From positions 179,670-243,669 of IMG/VR virus record IMGVR_UViG_3300005289_000052: a DNA stretch of 64,000 nt; one strand, written 5' to 3'. The notes under the pieces were generated by a model. The model saw only the letters and a program-made list of their open reading frames with translations, had not been told where the DNA came from and did not search any database. The position numbers were made by a program, and so were the translations under genes. Each line of letters opens with the position of its first letter. The first letter of the stretch is position 1. This document shows positions 2,317-21,896 of this stretch, piece by piece.

Positions 2317-4353
2317 TTAACGGTTCCAGGTCCCGGTGAAGGGGGAACCGAACATGCGGGAACCTTGTTGCTGACCGCCACCGTAGTTGAAGAAGCCACC
2401 AACGTTGTTGGCAACCAGGTGGTTGAGGTCGTAGCCGCCGCGCTGGGTCAGGACGTTGTTGTCGTCCAGGCCTTTCGCAGGACGCACGTTCAGACCGCAA
2501 CGTACGATTGCTTCGGACAGCGCTTCCAGGAAGGAGTTGTCGAAGCTTACGCGACGAGCAAAGCCTTTGACGTGGATTTCCGATGCCAGGAGCTGACGCA
2601 GGATTTCTTTGCGCTGAGCCAGGCGGATTTCCAGAGGAACCTGGATGTTGCGGTGAGTTTCTTCCCACGCCTCGACCAGTTTCGGGTTGGTCTTGCCAGC
2701 CAGGTTGAGGATGGCCAGGTAGTCGATCTCACGCAGGTCACGACGATTGCCTTCGCGATCGTAGTAGAAGCCCAGGTGGATACGGTCCTGATCGTCGTAG
2801 CACACTGGCTTGGACGCATCGAACAACTGCTGGAAGTGACCCATGGTCAGGTTGTTGGCTGCTTGCAGGATGGTCAGACGTGCGTTCTCGTCGCCGTTGG
2901 CGGCCGCGATGTAGGTCTGGTGAATCCAGGACAGCTCGCCAACCTCGGCGATGTCGAGGGTGAAGATCAGCTTTTGACCGATCAGCATGTTGATGAGCTG
3001 GCGCATTTCGTTGTCACCGAAGTCGGCGGAACGAGTTGGCAGTGCATCAGGCTTGGCTTGCGGATCGCCGGTCAGGTTGACTTCGTAACCGGTAGCACCC
3101 AGGTCTTTCAGGTCCACGTCGGTAGCCTTGCCCTTGTTGGCGCGCCAGGTACCGGTGAACAGGCCGTTGCGGTTCAGGCCGAAAGCAGTGGACAGGGCCA
3201 GGAGTTGCAGCTCCATGTTCACGGCGTCGGTCAGGGTGTCGACCGAGGTCAGCACCATACGCGGCTGGTACATCTGGGTAGCCATCATTTGCTGCTGGTT
3301 GCCGAACATGCCGAAGGCTTGCTGCTGAGGCTGGAAGCCTGCTTGAGCCGGTTGGTACATCAGGTCGACGTAGCCAGCGACGCGAGTCAGTTGGCGGGTC
3401 TGTTGCAGGCTGAACTGCGAGTCGGCTTGGGACTGCGCGGACATGGTGACGATGATGTCTTCACGTACCGGCATGCCCACGATGTCTTCGCCGTGCTGAC
3501 GAGTGAACTCGACGCGCGCGCTCAGTTGGTCGCCGGAGCCGACTTCACCCAGGGTGAACGGTTCTTCGTTGCCGCCGAGCTGGTTGTCCATGATGGTGTA
3601 GCAGGCCTGGGTGCTGTTGTGCAGCAGGCGGTTGAAGCGGTTCTCGGTGCTGACTTCAGCTTCGGCTGGAATCACAACGCCACCGGCATCGTGGATCTGA
3701 GCGTTGAAGCCGTAGCTGTTGATGACGAACTGCTCCAGAACTTGCCAGTACGACTTGTTCAGGTAGATGTCGCCAGGCACGATGTCGACTTCGACGGTGG
3801 TGCCGCCCAGGTTCACGCTGCTTGGGTCCAGTGGAGCGCCGCTCGATTCGACCAGCAGGCTGTAGACAGCGATGTGCTTCTGGCCCTGGTATTCTTCGTA
3901 GTAGCAGACCAGGATGCTGGAGAAAGTCACCTTGGACTGGTTGTTGTCCAGTACCAGGATGTTGAACTCTTTCTTCTGCTGTTCGGTCAGCACTTTGCCA
4001 GCGCGTTCTTTCAGACCCAGTTGAATGGTCTGAACGTCTTCACCGGACATGTTCCGTGGAACAGGGCGGCGGTGGTTGGCGTTGATGTCCAGGACCGAAC
4101 GGCCACGGCTACCTACGCGGGAGTTGTTGTTGGATTGCTGGTTCATCTGAGCACCTGCGTTGAAAGGCTGTTGCGGTTGAGCATTGCCGCCAGTTGGCTG
4201 CTGTTGCTGCCCACCGGTTGGTTGTTGAGTTTGTTCTTGGGGCTGTTCAGCACCCGTTGGAGTCATACCCGCTTTCAGCATGGCATCTGCCATTGCGCTG
4301 TTCTGCGGCTGGTTCCCCTGGCTCTGGCCAGGTCCATTACGTTTGACGGACAT
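2317..4353 (-). CDS. chmA: Chimallin / phage nuclear shell protein (phiKZ gp54 type)
   Basis: 678 aa, strongly biased high-expression codons, lies between DNA polymerase block and nvRNAP beta' as in phiKZ; RIHLGFY...RDLREIDYL segment; low-complexity N-terminus and G/F-rich C-tail; early promoter upstream. Confidence 0.88.
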   Translation of the reverse strand: MSVKRNGPGQSQGNQPQNSAMADAMLKAGMTPTGAEQPQEQTQQPTGGQQQQPTGGNAQPQQPFNAGAQMNQQSNNNSRVGSRGRSVLDINANHRRPVPRNMSGEDVQTIQLGLKERAGKVLTEQQKKEFNILVLDNNQSKVTFSSILVCYYEEYQGQKHIAVYSLLVESSGAPLDPSSVNLGGTTVEVDIVPGDIYLNKSYWQVLEQFVINSYGFNAQIHDAGGVVIPAEAEVSTENRFNRLLHNSTQACYTIMDNQLGGNEEPFTLGEVGSGDQLSARVEFTRQHGEDIVGMPVREDIIVTMSAQSQADSQFSLQQTRQLTRVAGYVDLMYQPAQAGFQPQQQAFGMFGNQQQMMATQMYQPRMVLTSVDTLTDAVNMELQLLALSTAFGLNRNGLFTGTWRANKGKATDVDLKDLGATGYEVNLTGDPQAKPDALPTRSADFGDNEMRQLINMLIGQKLIFTLDIAEVGELSWIHQTYIAAANGDENARLTILQAANNLTMGHFQQLFDASKPVCYDDQDRIHLGFYYDREGNRRDLREIDYLAILNLAGKTNPKLVEAWEETHRNIQVPLEIRLAQRKEILRQLLASEIHVKGFARRVSFDNSFLEALSEAIVRCGLNVRPAKGLDDNNVLTQRGGYDLNHLVANNVGGFFNYGGGQQQGSRMFGSPFTGTWNR

Positions 4354-9131: not shown

Positions 9132-9545
9132 TCAGATAGGTTTAGCCGACAGTTCCACGTGGTCGTATCCGTTCGCACCCAACAGCGCCAGGATGTGCTC
9201 GTAGTCGTCAGGCTTGACTTGAGAGATCTTGGCGTAGAGGACATCGAAGTTCATGGATACGATCGTGGATTCCCTGATCCATGGCAAGCCGAGGATTTCA
9301 AACTCGCCAGAAGGATGCTGAATACGCACATACATGTACGCAGTCGGATCGTCCGGGGTACCGGCTGGGAGCGAGGGATAAACGTTGACGTGCTTCTCCT
9401 GCACGCTGTGCCCCAGAGCACGAGCCGTGGTGTCGTCGATAATCGCCAACACTTTCACGTTCTTGTAGCTCGAAGGGAGCGCAGCGGCCGGGTAAACGGA
9501 AAACGACACAGTGCTCTTGGGGATCAATAAGTCCTGGGTAGCCAT
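9132..9545 (-). CDS. Conserved chimallivirus hypothetical protein (137 aa)
   Basis: ORF track; GGAG RBS; VYPSLPAGTPDDP...GLPWI motif. Confidence 0.75.
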   Translation of the reverse strand: MATQDLLIPKSTVSFSVYPAAALPSSYKNVKVLAIIDDTTARALGHSVQEKHVNVYPSLPAGTPDDPTAYMYVRIQHPSGEFEILGLPWIRESTIVSMNFDVLYAKISQVKPDDYEHILALLGANGYDHVELSAKPI

Positions 9546-9892
9546 TGGAAGTAAGACTCCTTGAACTCTACGAAGACTAGGCCTCGTGAATTCATTACTT
9601 TAATAGAAAGGAGAGGACCTCTTACCATGGTCTGCCAGAACCGTTCCCGTCTGATTCCTTCCACAAGATCCCAGAACAACTGGAATTGATCGTGGTCGTA
9701 CTCAGGGATATCGTAGTCATGCGGATCTACGATACCCAGAACAATGTTTATCAGCAGCTCAAGGTTGTTGGTGCGCTCTTCATCATAGGGTGTATCCTCA
9801 TAATGATTCTCCTCAGAATGGAGAGAACGCAAACCTTGGTACTGCTTAAGAGCCTCCGCTAGGCTTTGTGACACGAAGGCAACTCGACCCAC
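9524..9892 (-). CDS. Hypothetical protein, member of tandem small-gene run
   Basis: ORF track, GTG start with GAGG RBS. Confidence 0.7.
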   Translation of the reverse strand: MGRVAFVSQSLAEALKQYQGLRSLHSEENHYEDTPYDEERTNNLELLINIVLGIVDPHDYDIPEYDHDQFQLFWDLVEGIRRERFWQTMVRGPLLSIKVMNSRGLVFVEFKESYFQWLPRTY

Positions 9893-9900
9893 GATGACCT

Positions 9901-10257
9901 CTACTTAGTCGCCACCACCATTACAGTCTGGCTGACGAGTGCTTGAAAACGGTAGTGTAGCTTACCGGACTCATCGTAAAGCTTCATCTGACGGAAACAC
10001 TGTTGGAACCCGTTGGCCAGGTCTTGGAGTGCTTCTACCATGATGGAGCCATCGAATCCTGAACCGCCTTCACGGTGATCCAGTTCCCGATACGACTCGA
10101 TGTAAGCGTTGAGTGTGTTCATGTTATTACTATCGTGCAAATGATTAATTACATCCGACACGATAGATTTCAGATCATACTCGACGACAGACATCTTTGA
10201 GGTCGAAGCTTGGAAGTGCCGCAAAATATTTACACTGTTTAATGCGCAAGAAAGCAT
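9901..10257 (-). CDS. Hypothetical protein, tandem run
   Basis: ORF track, GAGG RBS. Confidence 0.7.
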   Translation of the reverse strand: MLSCALNSVNILRHFQASTSKMSVVEYDLKSIVSDVINHLHDSNNMNTLNAYIESYRELDHREGGSGFDGSIMVEALQDLANGFQQCFRQMKLYDESGKLHYRFQALVSQTVMVVATK

Positions 10258-10292
10258 GGCAAATCCTCGTCATAAAGCGAGGGCCGCAGCCC

Positions 10293-10712
10293 TCATCGAA
10301 ATGGTTCAATCAAGATGTTACTTCCGATCCATCTGCGGATCTCGTGATATCCATAGTTAGGTAACGGGGTGTATTGCAAAACCATTTCCCAAACTCGGTC
10401 GTGAATCTCACTAGCGAGTACGGTCAGGTGATGGATAGCAATAGCCTCCCCGTCAGAAAGCTCCGGCATACCAGCAGGCCGGTTAGCAATTAGATAGTCA
10501 GACATGATAGAGAGTGTAGACCATGTCGAATGTGGACGTAAGTCAAAAGACTGATTCAGATTCGACACAGTGAACGACAGCTCAATCAGATCCTTTATTT
10601 CAAGCGTGTGTTCTGCCAAGTACGGACCAAGATGGCTGTACTCGCGCATGATTCGTTCGACGGGAACGAGGATCTGTTGGTTTTGCACGATTACCAATCC
10701 TTCCATTTCCAC
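10293..10712 (-). CDS. Hypothetical protein, tandem run
   Basis: ORF track, AGGAG RBS. Confidence 0.7.
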   Translation of the reverse strand: MEMEGLVIVQNQQILVPVERIMREYSHLGPYLAEHTLEIKDLIELSFTVSNLNQSFDLRPHSTWSTLSIMSDYLIANRPAGMPELSDGEAIAIHHLTVLASEIHDRVWEMVLQYTPLPNYGYHEIRRWIGSNILIEPFR

Positions 10713-10732
10713 TCTCCTGAGAGTGTGTCAGG

Positions 10733-11164
10733 TTACCAGATTTCGATAAGATACCCACGGTCTGTGTGGTTGAGGTCGAAACTCCAATCACGGTGGCGCA
10801 TCAGTTTGGCTAGGTAGGGACGACAGATGCGTCTACCCAAGCCGTACACGTATTCGTAATGCTGTAGCAGGTCTCGCTCGGTGTGGAAGGCGTAGTAATC
10901 ATCCTTACACATCTGGTTTACCAAGATCTCATCCATCGCCATAACGAGACTTTCATGGTAAGCCAAAGGGTCATGAGTCAATTCGCCGTGTATCATGGTT
11001 AGCGTAAAGTCTACATGACCCATACCGATTATTCTCAGGGCCCGATCTTCTAACCTAGGAAAGATACTATCAGGCAAGTAAATGCTGAATATACCCTTAC
11101 AGGTCGGTAAGGTCACCTGTGATACCAAGCTGTCGGCGAAGTTCTGAAGGGTACCAATCGCCAT
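10733..11164 (-). CDS. Hypothetical protein, tandem run
   Basis: ORF track, GGAG RBS. Confidence 0.65.
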   Translation of the reverse strand: MAIGTLQNFADSLVSQVTLPTCKGIFSIYLPDSIFPRLEDRALRIIGMGHVDFTLTMIHGELTHDPLAYHESLVMAMDEILVNQMCKDDYYAFHTERDLLQHYEYVYGLGRRICRPYLAKLMRHRDWSFDLNHTDRGYLIEIW

Positions 11165-11570
11165 TATCTACTCCCTCTTGAATCTTTTGTCGCAAAACAT
11201 CAGTAGGGTTCTCTGGTCGGCAGCGTGCCAGTTGATAGATCACCACATCGCCACGTGGTGTCAACTCAAAGTCCCAACTCCAATCAGCCACCTCCACACG
11301 CACAAGTCCCCATACGTAACGCTTGATAGCGTCAATGGCTTCATCGAGCATGTCTTCGGCTTGGTTGTCAGGTATCTTATCGTCGTATGACTTAAGGTAC
11401 TTAACCAAGCTGTGGTAGCTAGACATCACGTTCCCATAGAGAACGTTTTCAACCAACCCGAAGTAGAACCCGGACAGGTCAACAAACTTGGCTTGAGCGC
11501 CAATGTAACTTGCTAGGCGCCCCTCCAGTTGTCTAATGACAGGAGCCCCAGGGATGACAAATGAGGCCAC
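11097..11570 (-). CDS. Hypothetical protein, tandem run
   Basis: ORF track; likely GTG start at 11570 with GGAG RBS. Confidence 0.65.
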   Translation of the reverse strand: MASFVIPGAPVIRQLEGRLASYIGAQAKFVDLSGFYFGLVENVLYGNVMSSYHSLVKYLKSYDDKIPDNQAEDMLDEAIDAIKRYVWGLVRVEVADWSWDFELTPRGDVVIYQLARCRPENPTDVLRQKIQEGVDNGDWYPSELRRQLGITGDLTDL

Positions 11571-12051
11571 GAGTGTTACTCCAATCCCAAATCCGGTAAT
11601 CACCTTTACGCTCCAGAATCAAGTTATTGCCGAACTCCTTGATTTCATAGACATCCCAACTCGGTCTATCCCCAAAGAGTTTGCCGAAGATCTGATTGAT
11701 TAAGCCTTCAATCGGATCACCAACAGCATCTACGAACATAGCTTTAAATTGGGGATGTAGATATTCATCGTTTGGACACAGTCGAGCCATTGCTCCCGAA
11801 CGGTGGCCACGCTCGATGAATTCCTTAGGGAACGGTCCGAATGCACGGGTGAGTTTCTTTTCTTCTGCTTCGATGGGGTACCAGCTCAACCAAGAGCGCA
11901 GTTGCTGGAGGACCATTGCTTTGGCCAACAACATACACTTAGATCGAGTTGCAGCAGGGATCAGGTGTTGACACCCAACCTCCAAGTAGAAGTTATCAAG
12001 CCTGTACTTCAACTGTAGTGCAATAGTTTCTACCGGATACAAGAAGTTCAT
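11533..12051 (-). CDS. Hypothetical protein, tandem run
   Basis: ORF track, GAGG RBS. Confidence 0.7.
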   Translation of the reverse strand: MNFLYPVETIALQLKYRLDNFYLEVGCQHLIPAATRSKCMLLAKAMVLQQLRSWLSWYPIEAEEKKLTRAFGPFPKEFIERGHRSGAMARLCPNDEYLHPQFKAMFVDAVGDPIEGLINQIFGKLFGDRPSWDVYEIKEFGNNLILERKGDYRIWDWSNTRGLICHPWGSCH

Positions 12052-12059
12052 GCCAGCCT

Positions 12060-12419
12060 CTAACTGCTAATCAAATACAATCCCGTCGGTCGGATCTCCA
12101 CACGGAGTTCTGACTCTGGGACATGGCTATACCCGCAGGCAGTCACCAACCGGAAGAGCCTATTACGCAGTACATTGTTTCTGTCAATACGCTGCATCAC
12201 TTTCAATACGGCGAATGAGGGACGTGGTTTCTCTATGCTGAGCAAAGTACTCAACTCGATACACTCAGCAACCCATGACAGTTCAACGGCTTCCACTGCA
12301 TTGACGTAGGAGAGTTCTTCGAAATCCCCATTGTACCAAGGTTCACAAATTTCCCGGTGGATCTCCATGCGGACCAAAGGGTGTAGGTTACGGTAATCCG
12401 CAACCAGTTCAAGTGCCAT
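12060..12419 (-). CDS. Hypothetical protein, first gene after early promoter
   Basis: ORF track, AGGTG RBS. Confidence 0.7.
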   Translation of the reverse strand: MALELVADYRNLHPLVRMEIHREICEPWYNGDFEELSYVNAVEAVELSWVAECIELSTLLSIEKPRPSFAVLKVMQRIDRNNVLRNRLFRLVTACGYSHVPESELRVEIRPTGLYLISS

Positions 12420-13212: not shown

Positions 13213-13298
13213 TGGTACCCGAAGCCGGACTCGAACCGGCACGGCCTAAGGCCAACGCATTTTAAGTGCGGTGCGTCTACCGATTCCGCCATTCGGGT
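13213..13298 (-). tRNA. tRNA-Leu(UAA)
   Basis: Cloverleaf, CT-TAA-AA loop, long variable arm, GGTTCGAGTCC, encoded CCA. Confidence 0.95.
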
Positions 13299-13397
13299 GA
13301 ATGGGTGCCTTCTTTCTATTTGTCTCTGAAAGGGTTCTTTGTTTCCGGCGCAGATCCTAACTCATTGACGAAAGAAGACATTGAAACGTTGAGAGAA

Positions 13398-13472
13398 CGA
13401 CGCTACAGGATTCGAACCTGCGGGAAATACCGGTCGCAATGCGACTGCCTTCGACCACTCAGCCAAGCGCCG
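13398..13472 (-). ncRNA. tRNA-like RNA with collapsed 3-nt anticodon loop and no CCA
   Basis: Acceptor CGGCGCT/AGCGTCG, D arm GCTGAGTGGTCGAAGGC, GTCGC-ATT-GCGAC, T arm GCAGG-TTCGAAT-CCTGT. Confidence 0.7.
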
Positions 13473-13545
13473 AACTCTCAAACTAGATTTCCCCACTAGG
13501 TTAAAGCCTAGCTGCCAAGGTCGGGATCGACCTAGTGGAGAAAGA

Positions 13546-13633
13546 TGGCGGAAGGACAGGGACTCGAACCCTGGGACCTTTTACAGTCGGCGGTTTTCAA
13601 GACCGCTGCAATACGCCGCTATGCGACCCTTCC
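13546..13633 (-). tRNA. tRNA-Ser(UGA)
   Basis: GCGGT-CTTGAAA-ACCGC, long variable arm, GCCA end. Confidence 0.95.
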
Positions 13634-13887
13634 GAAAATCAAGCCAGGGCTATTCCCTGGAGTCACTCCCACGCCTAGGCGACGCGACCGATTAGAGGAA
13701 ACCTGAGAGGACCGATCGGCACGGTTTGTCTCTCACCCTTTTGGGTATGGATGTCTAGACGTTGAGTTGTGTGAGCAACTCCCCATTCGTCCACAGGGCA
13801 GGGCCACCAGCAGGGCAGGCGCTTGGTGTTGGGCGGACCATCCCGTTTATACTCGGGTATCTAAGCGCCTGAGGCGCGATCCATAAA

Positions 13888-13975
13888 TGGCAGTAGATAA
13901 GAGATTCGAACTCTTGTGGCTGTTACACCAACACGCTTTCCAGGCGTGCCCCTTAAGCCTCTCGGGCAATCTACT
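13888..13975 (-). tRNA. tRNA-Ser(GGA)
   Basis: CACGC-CTGGAAA-GCGTG, long variable arm, GCCA end. Confidence 0.95.
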
Positions 13976-14142
13976 GTAAAAGATGTAGCAAATCAATCAT
14001 TACCCGGTGTGCGACGTGTTGTATTTAGACAGCTCGGTGTCCCTGCCAGGATTTCGGGTTGTACCTGGAATACTCTCCCGAAGGACAGTGTTATACCTTT
14101 CGGCGTTTTTAACTATAGGGACTGTTCTATCGCACCACTGAT

Positions 14143-14217
14143 TGAAACCTCTTGATGGAATCGAACCATCGTCTTCCCGCTTGGGCGGCAGGCTATCTAC
14201 CATTGAAATAAAGAGGG
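14143..14217 (-). tRNA. Atypical or pseudo tRNA-Gly(CCC)
   Basis: Cloverleaf with CCTGC-CGCCCAA-GCGGG (G33 instead of U33), good T arm, 1:72 mismatch, ends TTCA not CCA. Confidence 0.6.
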
Positions 14218-14218
14218 T

Positions 14219-14405
14219 GAGTTGTTTCCCTTTGGTCTATGTTCTCTGAGGTCGGACTCGAACCGACAATGTCTAACGCTCTAACCATTACGCTAGCACG
14301 CTTCGACGCACCCACAGACAGGCAGCCCTACTAAGGGGCCAGGGTCATCTTGCCCGAAGGCTCAACCCAGGGTATACCAATTCCCCCACTCGAGGGAAAC
14401 AACTC
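14219..14405 (-). ncRNA. Expanded tRNA-Leu(UAG)-like RNA with extra arms, enclosed by a 13-bp stem
   Basis: Leu-type D arm GGGGAATTGGTATACCC, GGCCC-CTTAGTA-GGGCT arm, T arm GTCGG-TTCGAGT-CCGAC, flanking GAGTTGTTTCCCT/AGGGAAACAACTC. Confidence 0.6.
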
Positions 14406-14585
14406 TGATCATTCTTAAGCAGTAGATTTCACCGTACCGTCGGCTGTAATGTTACTTTCTACTTGCCTAGGCTTTCGCCTTGATTCCCTGCATCCAGACT
14501 CGCGTTACTGGATACTGCTTAAGAACAACAATGACAAACAAGATTCCTTTGTAACGCGTATTGTATTGCCTAATTTTTCAAGGCG

Positions 14586-14665
14586 TGGCCAGGGGAGCCT
14601 TCGGACCCTACTCCCACATGGAACCCCTGTTGGTGGGGCTGCTTTAGAGCTTTTAGCGACTGGCC
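14586..14665 (-). pseudogene. Degenerate tRNA-Leu(CAA)-like element
   Basis: GGCCAG/CTGGCC-A acceptor, GCCCC-ACCAACA-GGGGT arm, variable hairpin; D and T loops non-canonical. Confidence 0.4.
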
Positions 14666-14694
14666 GTTTCACGTTACCGCTGTTTATCAATGTA

Positions 14695-14770
14695 TGGCAC
14701 GCATCCAAGGACTCGAACCTTGAACCTCTGGGTTTGGAGCCCAGCGCTCTGCCAGTTGAGCTAGACACGC
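14695..14770 (-). tRNA. tRNA-Trp(CCA)
   Basis: CTGGG-CTCCAAA-CCCAG, canonical D and T loops, GCCA end. Confidence 0.95.
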
Positions 14771-14879
14771 GTTGTTGCGGTCGCCCACACCACCGGTTAC
14801 TGATACCCTGAAGCGGGTTTCGGGTCATGAGTCCCCGTGCGTCAGTTAACTGCGATTTTACCAATGATGCAGGCGAACA

Positions 14880-14955
14880 TGGTAGCACCAAGTGGGTTCG
14901 AACCACCGACCTCGCCCTTATCAGGGGCGCGCTCTACCAACTGAGCTATAGCGCT
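14880..14955 (-). tRNA. tRNA-Ile(GAU)
   Basis: CGCCC-CTGATAA-GGGCG, ACCA end. Confidence 0.95.
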
Positions 14956-14962
14956 ATGAAAC

Positions 14963-15193
14963 TTAACACAGGATCGCGATACCCTCATCACAGTGACAAG
15001 GACAAGTACAAACCTCTTCGTCCTTACCATCGGGCTTTACAAGCACCCAATTGCGATGTGGTCGCGGTGTAGCGATGTCACGTTCTTCAATGCGAACGAT
15101 CTCACCAAACAGCTTTCGAAGGCGTTCAATATCGGGCGGACTATCGTAACTGGTCCTGAAAGTTGCTTGGGGGTATTTGCAACATCCAAACAT
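14963..15193 (-). CDS. Small Cys-rich protein (76 aa)
   Basis: Likely ATG at 15193 (MFGCCKY...CTCPCHC...C); follows the 60-aa gene. Confidence 0.55.
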   Translation of the reverse strand: MFGCCKYPQATFRTSYDSPPDIERLRKLFGEIVRIEERDIATPRPHRNWVLVKPDGKDEEVCTCPCHCDEGIAILC

Positions 15194-15209
15194 GACGTCA
15201 CCCTTGTGC

Positions 15210-15392
15210 TTAGGAAGCCTTGAGGACTTCGCCGATCTTGATCTCGCGATCGTCGTACACAACCCGGTGGCTGCTTTGACCATCTTGCAAGACGAACTCT
15301 TCATGAATCTCGCCAGTGACGCGATTCACGATACTCACTTTAACTTCCTTATCGGAAGAACAGTGGGCGGCAACAGTAACGGTGGTGGTCAT
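15210..15392 (-). CDS. Small beta-rich hypothetical protein (60 aa)
   Basis: GAGGAG RBS; MTTTVTVAAHC... Confidence 0.75.
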   Translation of the reverse strand: MTTTVTVAAHCSSDKEVKVSIVNRVTGEIHEEFVLQDGQSSHRVVYDDREIKIGEVLKAS

Positions 15393-15401
15393 GGTGACTC
15401 C

Positions 15402-15776
15402 TCAGGCTGAACGACGGTTGTGGTTGACGCGCTGGATTTCCAGCTCGACATACAATTCCATCGGGTACTGAGAAGGCAACTCAACCGAGACACGCGCATT
15501 GGCAGTCTCAGGATTCACGAACACCGCAAACGGTGCATTGGCGAAAGAGCCCAACACACCCTGCATGTTCACACCACGCGCAGCCTCGTTAACAATCGGG
15601 CTGTTGATGTTGCAAGCGATGTCAACACCATCGACGGTGGTAACACGCACAGCTTTCACCGATTCGATCGAGTCGGTTGCGTCGAAGTCTTCGATCTGGG
15701 TAGCCAACAGGCCAAACAGATTGACTTCACTAACCTTCAGCGGCAAGCGCAGATGGTCGACAGGATACTTGTACAT
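15402..15776 (-). CDS. Hypothetical protein; stand-alone paralog of the C-terminal domain of the DUF2829 protein
   Basis: Aligns by eye with the C-terminal ~120 residues of 15786..16418; both end NRRSx. Confidence 0.8.
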   Translation of the reverse strand: MYKYPVDHLRLPLKVSEVNLFGLLATQIEDFDATDSIESVKAVRVTTVDGVDIACNINSPIVNEAARGVNMQGVLGSFANAPFAVFVNPETANARVSVELPSQYPMELYVELEIQRVNHNRRSA

Positions 15777-15785
15777 GACAGCCCC

Positions 15786-16418
15786 TTAATCCGAGCGACG
15801 GTTGCGTTGGCCGTATTCGATACGAAGAACGGCGAACAGTTCGACACCGGCAGTCGGTGCGGCGTGAGCACAGGCTTCCCACATCTGGGTATCTACCTGA
15901 ATCGACAGAGCACGACCATTCGGCATCCGGTCGTTGAACGACTTCATGCGAGTCTCGCTCTTGTGTGCTACTGCTTCAACGACGTTGCTCTGGACGACCA
16001 GGGCATCAACCGTTTCAATGCGCACCACTTGGACTGAGAAGATCGCATCCAGCTTTTCCAACTTGGCGCCAGCGGCTTCACCCAACTCGTACAAGTTGGA
16101 GCGCACATCACCATCAAGCGGAATACGGACCTCGAACTTGTTGACGTAATCCTCAGCATCAAGGACTACCCAGTCGTCAGCCAGGATGTCAGACTGAGAG
16201 GCAACCCACGGCACAAAATCACCGTTGTGTGCTTTCAAGCCCAACCAAGGTCGCAGGTTCGGTGTAGGGTCCTTACGAACGTTGAGCCCAACGGTTCGGG
16301 CACCCACGTCATAGTGACTAGCGCCAACTAAGACGACCCACATGCCTTTACCGTTCCAACCCTCGCGTGTGGCGCGAGAGCCGTGCTTCAATCCCGTAAG
16401 GGCTTGACCGAACTCCAT
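15786..16418 (-). CDS. DUF2829 (Tad2-like anti-defence sponge) domain fused to an unknown C-terminal domain
   Basis: MEFGQAL..LK.G....R.GWNGKGMWV ... FVPWVASQSDILADDW signature; AGGAG RBS. Confidence 0.85.
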   Translation of the reverse strand: MEFGQALTGLKHGSRATREGWNGKGMWVVLVGASHYDVGARTVGLNVRKDPTPNLRPWLGLKAHNGDFVPWVASQSDILADDWVVLDAEDYVNKFEVRIPLDGDVRSNLYELGEAAGAKLEKLDAIFSVQVVRIETVDALVVQSNVVEAVAHKSETRMKSFNDRMPNGRALSIQVDTQMWEACAHAAPTAGVELFAVLRIEYGQRNRRSD

Positions 16419-16439
16419 GTGAAGCTCCTGTTGTGAAAT

Positions 16440-16513
16440 TGGGGTGAAGCCGGGAATCGAACCCTGGTCCTCTGCGCCACAAGCAGATGTTCTACCACTG
16501 AACTAGCAACACC
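16440..16513 (-). tRNA. tRNA-His(GUG)
   Basis: TCTGC-TTGTGGC-GCAGA, G-1:C73, CCA end. Confidence 0.92.
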
Positions 16514-16521
16514 ATTGAAAT

Positions 16522-16609
16522 TGGAGGTGGGTAAGAGATTCGAACTCTTGGAGCTGTTACACCCTGATCCTTAGCAAGGACCCGCAATCGGCCTCTCTGC
16601 CAACCCACC
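16522..16609 (-). tRNA. tRNA-Ser(GCU)
   Basis: GGTCC-TTGCTAA-GGATC, long variable arm, CCA end. Confidence 0.93.
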
Positions 16610-16629
16610 TTAAAACTGTACAACGAAAA

Positions 16630-16704
16630 TGGCTCCGAGACCTGGATTCGAACCAGGGACCAAACGGTTAACAGCCGTCTACTCTACCGCTGAGCTATCC
16701 CGGA
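16630..16704 (-). tRNA. tRNA-Asn(GUU)
   Basis: GACGG-CTGTTAA-CCGTT, GCCA end. Confidence 0.95.
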
Positions 16705-16811
16705 AAGGAAATTGAATGGGAAATGTGCCTCCGTCCCAAAGCGGAGGCGTAGGATATGGAGTGAACCATAACTGACGCCCGCAGCCACCCCGAAGGGCAA
16801 TCCACCACAAA

Positions 16812-16898
16812 TCAACGTAGGTTGCTTTATACCTGACTAAGCGACCAGACCATGGAGGAACTGACTAGGGGTATGATCCCTAGTTCTCCCTACGTTGA
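16812..16898 (-). ncRNA. Circularly permuted tRNA-like (YrlA-like topology) RNA candidate
   Basis: 10-bp terminal stem; T-like arm precedes an acceptor-like hairpin (with internal CCA) and a D-like arm. Confidence 0.5.
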
Positions 16899-16901
16899 AT
16901 A

Positions 16902-16977
16902 TGGCGCCTCCGAAGGGACTTGAACCCTCGGCCCCCGGCGTGACAGGCCGGTGCTCTAACCACTGAGCTACGGAAGC
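16902..16977 (-). tRNA. tRNA-Asp(GUC)
   Basis: CCGGC-CTGTCAC-GCCGG, GCCA end. Confidence 0.95.
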
Positions 16978-17171
16978 GTAAACGTCCTGAGGAAAATGGA
17001 CTCTGCGATCACCCAGACTGTGCCTGTAGGTGCATCACTTGTTGGCTCAAGGTTCGTGTAGACTACCATGGGCCAGGAACAATCTTGAGCGTGTCGACCG
17101 ACGTGGAGCACTAGAAAGCGCAACCCACTAGGAGAGAGGTACTCTCGATCCTTCTCAACAATCTCAATCAT
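16968..17171 (-). CDS. DUF1653-like small protein; stop codon lies inside tRNA-Asp
   Basis: Y..PSG..F.VLHVGRH......MVVY......G.VWV.....F pattern; GAGG RBS. Confidence 0.65.
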   Translation of the reverse strand: MIEIVEKDREYLSPSGLRFLVLHVGRHAQDCSWPMVVYTNLEPTSDAPTGTVWVIAESIFLRTFTLP

Positions 17172-17608
17172 GTTCATTCCTCGAATATGGCTCCGGCTTG
17201 CTTCCCGCCGCAAAGACGGTTCACTAACTCATGTGTAGCCAGACGACCCGCCGGAGAGGTCTTTAACTAGATGCACCAGTATCCCTGAGGTTCCGAAGAA
17301 GGCAGGTACACGATGCAACTCCACTGGACTACGAGTTTGGGTGATCCTCTCGGCAGATTCCCGCCGAGTTAATGCTGTGGGCCGCGGGGAGGGTTCGCTC
17401 AAAAGGCAACCAAAGCGGCTCTACTGCAAAGGATCGTAATCAACTTCCCTCGCACTGAGTGGATTGCTCAGCACTTATTTTCCTTGATCCCCAGGGACGG
17501 TAGGGACATCGACTCGGTGCCTGGCTACCCTTCCACAGGGCTGCTGGTAACGTTGTCTCACAAGGTAAAACCACCGTATCGCCAGCAAGGGTCGTTGCGG
17601 TGTTAAAA

Positions 17609-17684
17609 TGGCGGAGGGTAGTGGGATCGAACCACTGCATGATGGAATCAAAGTCCATTGCCTTACCAACTTGGCTAACCCTCT
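17609..17684 (-). tRNA. tRNA-Gln(UUG)
   Basis: ATGGA-CTTTGAT-TCCAT, GCCA end, 1:72 mismatch. Confidence 0.92.
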
Positions 17685-17834
17685 CTGAAATTTTTACCTC
17701 GCCGCTAAGCACGACACCTAGCGACTTATTATTACCGTGACCCCGGATCAAGGGTTGTCGATCAGGTTCGTTACGCCTGGCCCTACACGGTAAAACCCAT
17801 TGCAAAATCCCTAGGGCTATCACAATGTTAAAAG

Positions 17835-17919
17835 TGGTGGATGATCTAGGACTCGAACCTAGGGTGTATCAATGTGCCGATTTACAGTCGGTTGTCTTCG
17901 CCGCTCGACGCAATCATCC
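17835..17919 (-). tRNA. tRNA-Tyr(GUA)
   Basis: CCGA-CTGTAAA-TCGG, long variable arm, ACCA end. Confidence 0.93.
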
Positions 17920-20930: not shown

Positions 20931-21896
20931 TTACAGAACCAGGAAGTCCTGGGTTGCAGCGTCTTTCTCGGTCACGAGGACTTTGGCAGAGCTGCGGCCT
21001 TCACGACGTTCCACGAATTGCTCGACCGTACGGTTAAGCGTGTCGTAAGATTGGCCAAGGAACTGCGTCGAAATGACGTAGTGCAGTTCGCTGACACCCT
21101 CGACCGGCGTCTGGAAGAAACCGGCGCAGGAGTATTCCGGCACTGGGCTTTGCAGTTGCGCTTGGTCGCGATCGGCGTACAGGCTTGCGATTGCGATTGG
21201 GTCCAGGATTTCCTTGACCTTCTCGGCGTCGCTGTAGATGTCCAGCAAGGCCAGTTGTGCTTCGACCGAAGTGGACTTGTTGAAACGCAGCCAGTGCAGA
21301 ACGTCCATGGTGTCCAGCTCGGCGTTCTGGCGGGAAGCCAGGTAGCGCAGGCAGGTGATGGCGAAGTGCAGTTGACCGTCGATGGTAGAACGCGTGGTGC
21401 CCTCGCCACTGTGGCGGTAGAAGGCAACGACCGGAACCTTGATACCGTTGGAGATCGCCGACAGCGACTTCAAGGTGTTCAGGCTGTTCTGTGCAGTGAT
21501 GGTGGACTCGGCGGAACCCGCACTGACCACGACCACAGCTTTGCCACGTTCCAGGAGTTCACGAACGATCAGCGGACCGATCACCGAACCCGAACCGCCC
21601 GAGGCGGAGAACACGACGATGTTGAAATCTTCTGGTGGCTGAGCCAACAGGATTTGCTTGATGCTGTCCGAGATGACCTGGTGGTTCTCGCGACGAACCT
21701 TACCGGAACCGTCAGTGCCTTCGAGCACGAAGATGGCTTCGGCTGGGATGGTGGTGTCCAGGTTGGAACGGCTGGTGTCTACGAAAGAGACCAGTGGGGT
21801 GGCGAAACCTGCGACTTCTTTCTGGCCGAGGTAACGTTTGGCGATGTTGTTGCCCAGACCGCCTGCACCGTAAATACGAACTTTGCCTTGAGACAT
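20931..21896 (-). CDS. phuZ: PhuZ phage tubulin
   Basis: GAGGLGNN, VDTSRSN, GSGKVR, ASGGSGSV tubulin signature, ELDTMD (T7 loop), acidic/hydrophobic C-tail. Confidence 0.95.
   Translation of the reverse strand: MSQGKVRIYGAGGLGNNIAKRYLGQKEVAGFATPLVSFVDTSRSNLDTTIPAEAIFVLEGTDGSGKVRRENHQVISDSIKQILLAQPPEDFNIVVFSASGGSGSVIGPLIVRELLERGKAVVVVSAGSAESTITAQNSLNTLKSLSAISNGIKVPVVAFYRHSGEGTTRSTIDGQLHFAITCLRYLASRQNAELDTMDVLHWLRFNKSTSVEAQLALLDIYSDAEKVKEILDPIAIASLYADRDQAQLQSPVPEYSCAGFFQTPVEGVSELHYVISTQFLGQSYDTLNRTVEQFVERREGRSSAKVLVTEKDAATQDFLVL

What the first reader, a model, noticed from the sequence alone, without database searches (positions are those of the whole stretch)
15402..16418. Tad2-like (DUF2829) sponge fused to an unknown domain, followed by a free copy of that domain
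Seen: the C-terminal ~120 aa of 15786..16418 aligns with all of 15402..15776 (VRIPL/LRLPL, NLYEL/NLFGL, DAIFSVQVVRIETVD/DSIESVKAVRVTTVD, ELFAVLRI/ELYVELEI, NRRSD/NRRSA). Known: DUF2829 includes Tad2, an oligomeric sponge for Thoeris gcADPR and some cyclic dinucleotides, usually a ~90-aa single domain. Inference: a two-component anti-defence module in which the new domain is a second sponge or hetero-oligomer scaffold.
Basis: partly seen in the sequence, partly recalled or inferred. Interest (0 to 1): 0.72.

Follow-up and report, generated by a model that had tools for sequence, protein, structure and literature searches.

The report
Tad2 sponge fused to capsid-like domain
A nucleus-forming jumbo phage encodes a Tad2-type immune-signal sponge joined to a domain that looks like a copy of the outward-facing insertion domain of its own capsid protein. 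A second, free copy of that domain sits in the next gene, an arrangement not described before that suggests a link between signal sponging and capsid sensing.

Summary
ORF B (15786..16418, minus strand, 210 aa) has a Tad2-like domain at residues 1-86: PF11195 scores 81 bits against a cut-off of 25, the model matches solved Tad2 structures, and the gcADPR pocket residues are kept. Residues 88-210 are a second domain, X. ORF A (15402..15776, minus strand, 124 aa) is a true paralogue of X.

New findings:
- X is found only with Tad2, in one clade of PhuZ/chimallin jumbo phages.
- X comes in two old types. Type b is fused here; type a is free here but fused to Tad2 in sister phages. The two types swap independently of the Tad2 domain.
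- The free copy is under purifying selection (omega about 0.1). The fused Xb is a divergence valley between conserved flanks.
- Both X models match the insertion (I) domain of jumbo-phage major capsid proteins best. A profile comparison places X inside the I domain of this phage's own capsid protein (score 37.8; best of 150 shuffles 22.1).
- Pairing of free Xa with fused Xb is predicted with weak support only.

"Second sponge" is untested; known Tad2 fusions give it precedent, but the fold, the narrow range and the hypervariability point more towards protein binding. This is a new variant of a known kind.

The parts
15786..16418 (-). ORF B, 210 aa: Tad2-like domain fused to X domain of type b (Tad2-Xb)
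   Evidence: ORF listed. PF11195 at residues 1-85. AF2 model has mean pLDDT 87.6. Orthologues P0005-P0009 and P0016 found.
16161..16418 (-). Tad2-like domain (residues 1-86) with the gcADPR-type pocket residues W21, N22, G23, W71, S74, S76, D77
15789..16157 (-). X domain, type b (residues 88-210): beta-rich, capsid I-domain-like, hypervariable among close relatives
15777..15788 (-). Junction: TAA stop of ORF B overlapping a Shine-Dalgarno-like AAGGGG, 9 nt before the ATG of ORF A; identical layout in eight related loci
15402..15776 (-). ORF A, 124 aa: free X domain of type a (Xa)
15210..15392 (-). 60-aa ORF that always follows X (after the free Xa here, after the Tad2-Xa fusion in sister phages); possible third member of the unit, function unknown
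   Evidence: No Pfam or PHROG match.
16441..16513 (-). tRNA-His, 22 nt upstream of ORF B; the module lies inside a same-strand cluster of 13 tRNA genes (13213-17919)
   Evidence: No sigma-70-type promoter on the coding strand and no intrinsic terminator in 14800-17400.

Best explanation
This is a two-gene counter-defence unit of a nucleus-forming jumbo phage. The N-terminal domain of ORF B is a Tad2-family sponge. By homology it should form oligomers that bind and hold TIR-made ADP-ribose-type alarm molecules (gcADPR and/or His-ADPR), so that the Thoeris effector stays off. This step is inferred from the conserved fold and pocket. The C-terminal domain X, and its free paralogue ORF A, are most likely descended from the insertion (I) domain of the phiKZ-type major capsid protein. 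That domain is the outward-facing extension of the E-loop and makes I-domain-to-I-domain contacts between capsomers. This step has moderate support from structure and profile comparison. I therefore read X as a protein-protein contact module rather than an enzyme or a nucleotide pocket. Fused Xb and free Xa would pair through equivalent faces (predicted, weak support). The exposed X surface would engage a protein that normally meets the capsid I domain, either the phage's own capsid protein or, more interestingly, a host sensor of capsid protein. That would place the sponge at the step where the alarm is raised. This last step is inference. The free Xa gene is a kept, functional gene. It corresponds in position to the X half of the Tad2-Xa fusions of sister phages.
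For: Tad2 domain:
- PF11195 scores 81 bits against a cut-off of 25.
- Solved Tad2 sequences match at E 1e-14.
- W21, N22, G23, W71, S74, S76 and D77 align with the residues that bind gcADPR in HgmTad2 and SPO1 Tad2 (with 10.1101/2023.11.15.567273 and 10.1101/2023.05.01.538930).

X and the capsid I domain:
- Two separately built models, Xa and Xb, each give the same four top non-Tad2 matches: the capsid proteins of S6, phiKZ, phi-Kp24 and P1.
- The phiKZ range matched (248-472, 250-467) is exactly the published I domain (PMC11297242). P1's I domain is of the same kind (PMC12810830).
- hhalign of the X profile against a 13-sequence capsid profile gives score 37.8, E 1.3e-4 and probability 54%. 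It aligns X 11-97 with own capsid residues 270-366, inside the own I domain at about 230-454.
- 150 column shuffles gave 14.1 +/- 2.3 with a maximum of 22.1.
- Xa-only and Xb-only profiles hit the same place in the same register.

Linkage to Tad2:
- A full HMM scan of 1.84 billion proteins finds X only fused to Tad2 or next to it.

Functional free copy:
- dN/dS is 0.07-0.11, identity among relatives is 85-98%, and the junction is conserved and coupled.

Arms-race signature:
- Xb is 54-74% identical where the Tad2 domain is 92-97% identical.
- Xb is a nucleotide divergence valley.
- X types swap relative to Tad2: P0010 and P0011 are 71% identical in Tad2 but 25% in X.

Pairing:
- ipSAE is 0.36 against a best control of 0.00. 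That mark was reached by 58 of 80 solved complexes and 2 of 110 mismatched pairs in the tool's calibration, which rates a pass at 0.60 or under as weak. The predicted interface uses equivalent strands of both copies.

Context:
- Chimallin and PhuZ are in the window.
- A NAMPT gene lies elsewhere in the genome.
Against: - No binding or defence assay exists for any part.
- The hhalign probability is only 54%. With the capsid as a single sequence the signal is not significant: E 0.027, ranked second among 164 ORFs.
- X covers only about half of the I domain and shares about 22-27% identity with it over 48-86 columns, which is poor for a surface mimic.
- The complex prediction passes only in the weak band, and its interface is not more conserved than the rest of X.
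- Tetramer formation with the extra domain was not tested.
- The host and its defence systems are unknown.
- The two Tad2 fusion partner families named in the cited preprint (Acb4, Sequestin) are nucleotide sponges, which favours the rival.
Confidence: 0.4

Rival explanations
1. X is a second signal sponge. Xa and Xb form homo- or hetero-oligomers with pockets at their interfaces that hold a different immune nucleotide. A phage carrying both types then covers more signals.
For: The Tad2 fusion partner families named in the cited preprint, Acb4 (PF13876) and Sequestin (PF21825), are sponges that also occur as free proteins. Fusion to Tad2 has been used successfully to discover sponges (10.1101/2025.07.12.664507; the architectures are also seen). 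X occurs both fused and free. A homotypic contact is predicted. The C-terminal Arg-Arg and the Asp35, Thr47 and Asp49 positions are invariant or nearly so across both types at about 22% identity.
Against: X has no Pfam, PHROG or PDB sequence match. It is beta-rich and about 120 aa, and its best structural relatives are capsid contact domains rather than ligand binders. The family is confined to one phage clade, unlike known sponge families, which spread across phyla. Xb is hypervariable while the adjacent Tad2 domain is nearly fixed. No ligand test was possible.
Confidence: 0.25
2. X is only an oligomerisation or stabilising tail for the Tad2 tetramer. The free Xa caps it or is a leftover of a rearranged Tad2-Xa gene with no separate role.
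For: The capsid I domain forms dimers (PMC11297242). A homotypic Xa-Xb contact is predicted. Sister phages manage with a single fusion and no free copy. The 3' junction of free Xa equals that of the Tad2-Xa fusions.
Against: The free copy is under clear purifying selection and keeps its own ribosome-binding site in all relatives. A purely structural tail that must fit a conserved partner is not expected to be the most divergent stretch of the locus, nor to swap types.
Confidence: 0.2
3. The likeness of X to the capsid I domain is a chance meeting of common beta-sandwich shapes. X is an unrelated, clade-specific domain of unknown role.
Against: The same four capsid proteins top both independent models and stand apart from the next hits. 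The sequence-profile signal falls in the same capsid domain and exceeds all 150 shuffles by a wide margin.
Confidence: 0.15

Closest known systems
Tad2 (SPO1 gp34.65; Myroides odoratus Tad2; HgmTad2/AcrIIA7), Pfam PF11195 / DUF2829
   Same: The N-terminal 86 residues have the same fold and keep the residues that hold gcADPR. The best sequence match is the Myroides Tad2, which has been solved with His-ADPR.
   Different: It carries a C-terminal domain of about 120 aa not reported for the family. It has the short beta2-beta5 insertion and lacks R31 and N85 of the HgmTad2 cyclic-di-GMP site (with 10.1101/2023.11.15.567273). It sits in a nucleus-forming jumbo phage.
Fused sponges: Acb4-Tad2 (Pasteurella phage Pm86) and Sequestin (PF21825)-Tad2
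   Same: Tad2 is joined to a second module that also exists as a free protein, in a single counter-defence gene (10.1101/2025.07.12.664507).
   Different: X is neither Acb4 nor Sequestin. It has no Pfam hit, is beta-rich rather than a 60-80 aa helical protein, lies C-terminal rather than N-terminal to Tad2, and is confined to one phage clade. The free and fused copies are adjacent paralogues of two different types.
Insertion (I) domain of phiKZ-type, T4-type and P1-type major capsid proteins (phiKZ gp120 residues 248-472)
   Same: It is the best structural match for both X copies. A weak profile match falls inside the I domain of this phage's own capsid protein. The I domain is a protein-contact domain that forms dimers (PMC11297242; PMC12810830).
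   Different: X is about half the size, is not inserted in an HK97-fold protein, and shares only about 22-27% identity over the aligned part. It is fused to a sponge or stands alone.
Small uncharacterised proteins of phiKZ-like phages (Phabio, PS119XW, Psa21, PhiPA3 gp366, PhiEaH1) in BFVD
   Same: Similar predicted shape (TM 0.55-0.65, Foldseek probability 1.00) and similar size.
   Different: No sequence similarity was detectable, none is known to be linked to Tad2, and their functions are unknown.

Membership tests
Tad2 / PF11195 | Match to the family profile above the curated cut-off | tested here: met
   81.2 bits against a cut-off of 25, E 7.9e-23, residues 1-85.
Tad2 / PF11195 | Tad2 fold | tested here: met
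Tad2 / PF11195 | Residues of the gcADPR pocket (HgmTad2 W21, N22, G23, W87, S90, T92, D93; SPO1 W25, N26, W73, S76, T78, D79) | tested here: met
   W21, N22, G23, W71, S74, S76 and D77 align with them. The residue lists come from 10.1101/2023.11.15.567273 and 10.1101/2023.05.01.538930.
Tad2 / PF11195 | Homotetramer with pockets between protomers | not tested
   Only two copies were folded, and only the partner chain was scored.
Tad2 / PF11195 | Binds gcADPR or His-ADPR and relieves Thoeris | not testable with these tools
   Needs binding and plaque assays.
HgmTad2-type cyclic-dinucleotide site | Long (35-41 residue) beta2-beta5 insertion with R31, S47, F70 and N85 | tested here: not met
   The insertion is about 26 residues, position 31 is Val, and N85 falls in a gap.
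Capsid protein insertion (I) domain (phiKZ gp120 248-472 type) | Structural match covering the I domain | tested here: inconclusive
Capsid protein insertion (I) domain (phiKZ gp120 248-472 type) | Sequence-profile relationship to the I domain | tested here: inconclusive
   hhalign score 37.8, E 1.3e-4, probability 54%; the best of 150 shuffles scored 22.1. Xa-only and Xb-only profiles hit the same register.
Capsid protein insertion (I) domain (phiKZ gp120 248-472 type) | Inserted in the E-loop of an HK97-fold capsid protein | tested here: not met
   X is fused to Tad2 or stands free. The real capsid gene lies elsewhere, at G000 62007-64187. X is therefore at most a derivative of the domain, not a capsid protein.
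Known Tad2-fused sponges (Acb4 PF13876, Sequestin PF21825) | Profile match or the family's fold (Sequestin: 60-80 aa, helical) | tested here: not met
   X has no Pfam match at E up to 1. The X models are mostly beta. The local Pfam copy may lack PF21825, so for Sequestin this rests on the fold.
Signal sponges in general | Small homo-oligomer with ligand pockets at protomer interfaces | tested here: inconclusive
   A homotypic Xa-Xb contact is predicted with weak support. The interface is not more conserved than the rest. No ligand test was done.

The most novel reading that the evidence does not exclude
X is a capsid decoy. It would be a cut-out copy of the E-loop insertion domain of the phage's own major capsid protein that binds host sensors of capsid protein, for example ThsB-type TIR proteins. 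The staphylococcal ThsB1 needs the capsid E-loop to bind (PMC12578639). Fused to Tad2, the decoy would put the sponge exactly where the alarm molecule is made, or block the sensor outright. The free Xa would be a stand-alone decoy of a second specificity. The hypervariable, swappable Xb would record an arms race with the sensors.
Probability: 0.2. Interest if true: 0.9.

Novelty: new variant of a known kind. Interest (0 to 1): 0.62.

Why it matters
Tad2 sponges are known, and so are fusions of Tad2 to other sponges. A sponge joined to a module that appears to derive from the phage's own capsid surface domain has not been described, to my knowledge and in the papers searched. Nor has a free paralogue of such a module next door, or allelic swapping and hypervariability of the fused copy.

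If X binds capsid sensors or capsid protein, it would link two layers of the same conflict in one protein: how TIR systems see phages, and how phages silence the signal. It would also give a handle on what nucleus-forming jumbo phages must still fear in the cytoplasm. If X instead binds a nucleotide, it is a new sponge family found by the fusion rule. Either outcome can be tested directly with three small proteins.

Tried and rejected
- **Alcaligenes phage vB_Af_QDWS595 gp05/gp06.** tblastn appeared to extend over 99% of ORF B. The downstream gp06 is not similar to X (E 5.3 and 0.36), so the extension was driven by the Tad2 part.
- **Vibrio phages D484 and relatives.** The 85% cover runs over two genes on opposite strands and is not a fusion homologue.
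- **Stop-codon read-through joining B and A.** The two are in frame with a constant 9-nt spacer in all relatives. But the stop is TAA and overlaps a ribosome-binding site, so ordinary translational coupling is the simpler reading.
- **Sequence searches for X.** Pfam, PHROGs, PDB sequences and phage-genome tblastn gave nothing.
- **Foldseek against PDB and AFDB clusters for X.** Only weak hits: phiKZ capsid at probability 0.93, and a baseplate-J-like domain at TM 0.58.
- **ESM Atlas feature search.** Only leads under 0.9, to PRD1-type coat proteins.
- **Conservation of the predicted Xa-Xb interface.** Not higher than the rest of the domain.
- **Promoter and terminator scan.** Uninformative.
- **Public sequencing runs.** Only runs holding at most 13% of the words, probably the tRNA part, so no reads were laid.
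- **Co-variation of Xb with the capsid I domain.** Too few paired genomes.

Full report
**Setting.** The window is the last 64 kb of a complete 243,669-bp virus record with direct terminal repeats. It belongs to a nucleus-forming jumbo phage. The window encodes:
- the nuclear shell protein (2317..4353) and PhuZ tubulin (20931..21896);
- several multisubunit RNA polymerase pieces and a DNA polymerase;
- the large terminase and the tail sheath.

The nearest deposited phages are only about 44% identical in a virion protein (Xanthomonas phage Xoo-sp14). The finding lies inside a same-strand cluster of 13 tRNA genes (13213-17919), 22 nt downstream of tRNA-His.

- ORF B (15786..16418, minus, 210 aa) matches Pfam PF11195 over residues 1-85, at 81 bits against a cut-off of 25.
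- ORF A (15402..15776, minus, 124 aa) aligns with ORF B residues 97-209: 24% identity over 116 columns, E 1e-5.
- The Smith-Waterman score of 69 exceeds all 2000 shuffles (mean 27.7, sd 4.8).
- Profiles of the two orthologue groups align with 94.7% probability.
- With intermediate sequences the two align end to end.
- Their AlphaFold2 models (pLDDT 87.6 and 84.9) have the same order of strands and one helix.

I call the shared domain X, the fused copy Xb and the free copy Xa.

**The Tad2 half.**
- It matches solved Tad2 proteins by sequence (Myroides Tad2 8v3e/9eib, E 1e-14; HgmTad2, SptTad2, SPO1 Tad2).
- The residues that hold gcADPR in HgmTad2 (W21, N22, G23, W87, S90, T92, D93) and SPO1 Tad2 (W25, N26, W73, S76, T78, D79) align with W21, N22, G23, W71, S74, S76 and D77 here (10.1101/2023.11.15.567273; 10.1101/2023.05.01.538930).
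- The separate cyclic-di-GMP site of HgmTad2 is not present: the insertion is short, residue 31 is Val, and N85 is deleted.

A sponge for TIR-made ADP-ribose signals is therefore the well-founded, though untested, reading of this half. A NAMPT gene elsewhere in the genome fits a phage that faces NAD-depleting defence.

**Where X occurs.** X has no Pfam, PHROG, PDB-sequence or phage-genome match.
- A word-indexed search found only close orthologues: free Xa at 85-98% identity, and fused Xb at 55-75% identity in X.
- A full HMM scan of 1.84 billion representatives found four more proteins. All are Tad2-X fusions from related PhuZ-encoding jumbo phages in the same genomic slot.
- Two of these (P0010, P0013) carry b-type X.
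- Two (P0011, P0012) carry a-type X, 42-46% identical to the free ORF A.
- Those phages have one fusion gene and no free copy.
- The ESM Atlas holds a 94-member cluster of such 212-aa fusions.
- A complete relative with a 66%-identical capsid protein has no X at all.

X is thus tied to Tad2 and confined to one clade.

**How the pair arose.**
- The 3' junction of free Xa to the conserved 60-aa gene is the same as the junction of the Tad2-Xa fusions in sister phages. The free gene therefore corresponds in position to the X half of such a fusion.
- Tad2 and X histories disagree. P0010 and P0011 share 71% identity in Tad2 but only 25% in X, so X types have been exchanged.
- ORF B ends in TAA, overlapping an AAGGGG ribosome-binding site 9 nt before ORF A's ATG. 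This layout is identical in eight related loci, which indicates ordinary coupling. Read-through is unlikely.

**Selection.**
- Among five phages the Tad2 codons have dN/dS 0.02-0.09, with dS 0.3-0.8.
- Free Xa has dN/dS 0.07-0.11, so it is a maintained gene.
- Xb has dN 0.12-0.47 with saturated dS.
- Along the locus, nucleotide identity is 83-94% in Tad2, falls to 34-71% in Xb, and rises again to 78-100% in Xa.

This valley suggests allele exchange or diversifying pressure on Xb.

**What X resembles.** Foldseek against the PDB was weak for X, but its one high-probability hit was the phiKZ capsid protein (probability 0.93).
- The phiKZ ranges matched (248-472 and 250-467) coincide with the published insertion domain of gp120. 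That domain extends the HK97 E-loop on the capsid surface and forms I-domain dimers between capsomers (PMC11297242). P1's I domain is of the same kind (PMC12810830).
- I located this phage's own capsid gene at G000 62007-64187 (E 1.6e-84 to gp120) and built a 13-sequence capsid profile.
- hhalign of the X profile against it gave score 37.8, E 1.3e-4 and probability 54%. It aligns X 11-97 with capsid 270-366, inside the own I domain at about 230-454.
- 150 column shuffles gave 14.1 +/- 2.3, with a maximum of 22.1.
- Xa-only and Xb-only profiles hit the same spot in the same register.
- Against the capsid as a single sequence the signal is not significant.

Taken together, descent of X from the capsid I domain is likely but not proven. 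BFVD also lists small uncharacterised proteins of phiKZ-like phages with a similar shape.

**Do the two copies pair?** Two copies of ORF B were folded with two copies of ORF A.
- The result was ipSAE 0.36 (three runs: 0.35-0.41) against 0.00 for three controls.
- The tool rates this as weak support. The mark was reached by 58 of 80 solved complexes and 2 of 110 mismatches, but passes at 0.60 or under were more often wrong than right in its calibration.
- The contact uses equivalent strands of both copies: B 136-144, 165-169, 190-194 with A 46-54, 75-78, 104-108.
- These positions are not more conserved than the rest of the domain.

**Interpretation.**
- Shown: a Tad2-family domain with an intact pocket; a paralogous fused/free domain pair exclusive to Tad2 in one jumbo-phage clade; purifying selection on the free copy; hypervariability and type swapping of the fused copy.
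- Likely: X descends from the capsid I domain.
- Inferred: X is a protein-contact module that pairs with its paralogue and engages a partner of the capsid I domain.

The most novel reading is a capsid decoy for capsid-sensing TIR proteins. In Staphylococcus, ThsB1 binds the capsid protein through its E-loop (PMC12578639), and the I domain is an E-loop extension.

It has real precedent, because Tad2 is often fused to the sponges Acb4 and Sequestin, which also occur free (10.1101/2025.07.12.664507). Against it stand the capsid-like fold, the confinement to one clade, and the hypervariability next to a nearly fixed Tad2 domain. None of these is decisive. Binding assays with X-only proteins would settle it.

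**Verdict.** This is a new variant of a known kind: a Tad2 sponge with a new, probably capsid-derived, accessory module in fused and free form. Interest is moderate to high because of the unexpected capsid link and because the competing readings are cheaply testable.

Noticed in passing
window 13213-17919 (minus strand): A cluster of 13 tRNA genes (Leu, Ala, Ser x3, Gly, Trp, Ile, His, Asn, Asp, Gln, Tyr), with small protein genes, including the Tad2-X unit, embedded between them. The region is highly mosaic among relatives.
   Followed up: partly
window 15210-15392 (minus strand): A 60-aa ORF that always follows X: after the free Xa here, and after the fusion in L007/L008 (70% identity). Its ribosome-binding site overlaps the X stop codon. 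It has no family match and may be a third part of the unit.
   Followed up: partly
window about 14966-15193 (minus strand): A Cys-rich 76-aa ORF (with a CTCPCHC-type motif), 92% identical in relative L003, just downstream of the 60-aa gene.
   Followed up: no
window 9132-12419 (minus strand): A row of eight small same-strand ORFs (118-172 aa), conserved in order in relatives. Their function is unknown.
   Followed up: no
G000 101956-103914 (outside the window): A nicotinamide phosphoribosyltransferase gene (phrog_448, E 8e-173). This NAD salvage function is known from other phages to counter NAD-depleting defences, which fits the presence of a Thoeris-type sponge.
   Followed up: no
P0012; G001 170457-170804; G002 92781-93134: Sister phages carry a 282-289 aa version with an extra N-terminal stretch of about 77 aa before Tad2-Xa. 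Its start resembles the N-terminal domain common in 155-170 aa Tad2-like proteins. There was no Pfam hit in the local copy.
   Followed up: partly
G000 62007-64187 (capsid gene) and loci L040-L048: Among close relatives the capsid I domain diverges faster than the rest of the mature capsid protein (86 vs 93%, 76 vs 90%, 61 vs 74% identity).
   Followed up: partly
window 2317-4353 and 20931-21896: Chimallin-type nuclear shell protein and PhuZ tubulin. The phage is of the nucleus-forming kind.
   Followed up: yes
G005 (record behind L048): A complete relative (direct terminal repeats, capsid protein 66% identical) has no X domain at all. The module is therefore accessory within the clade.
   Followed up: partly
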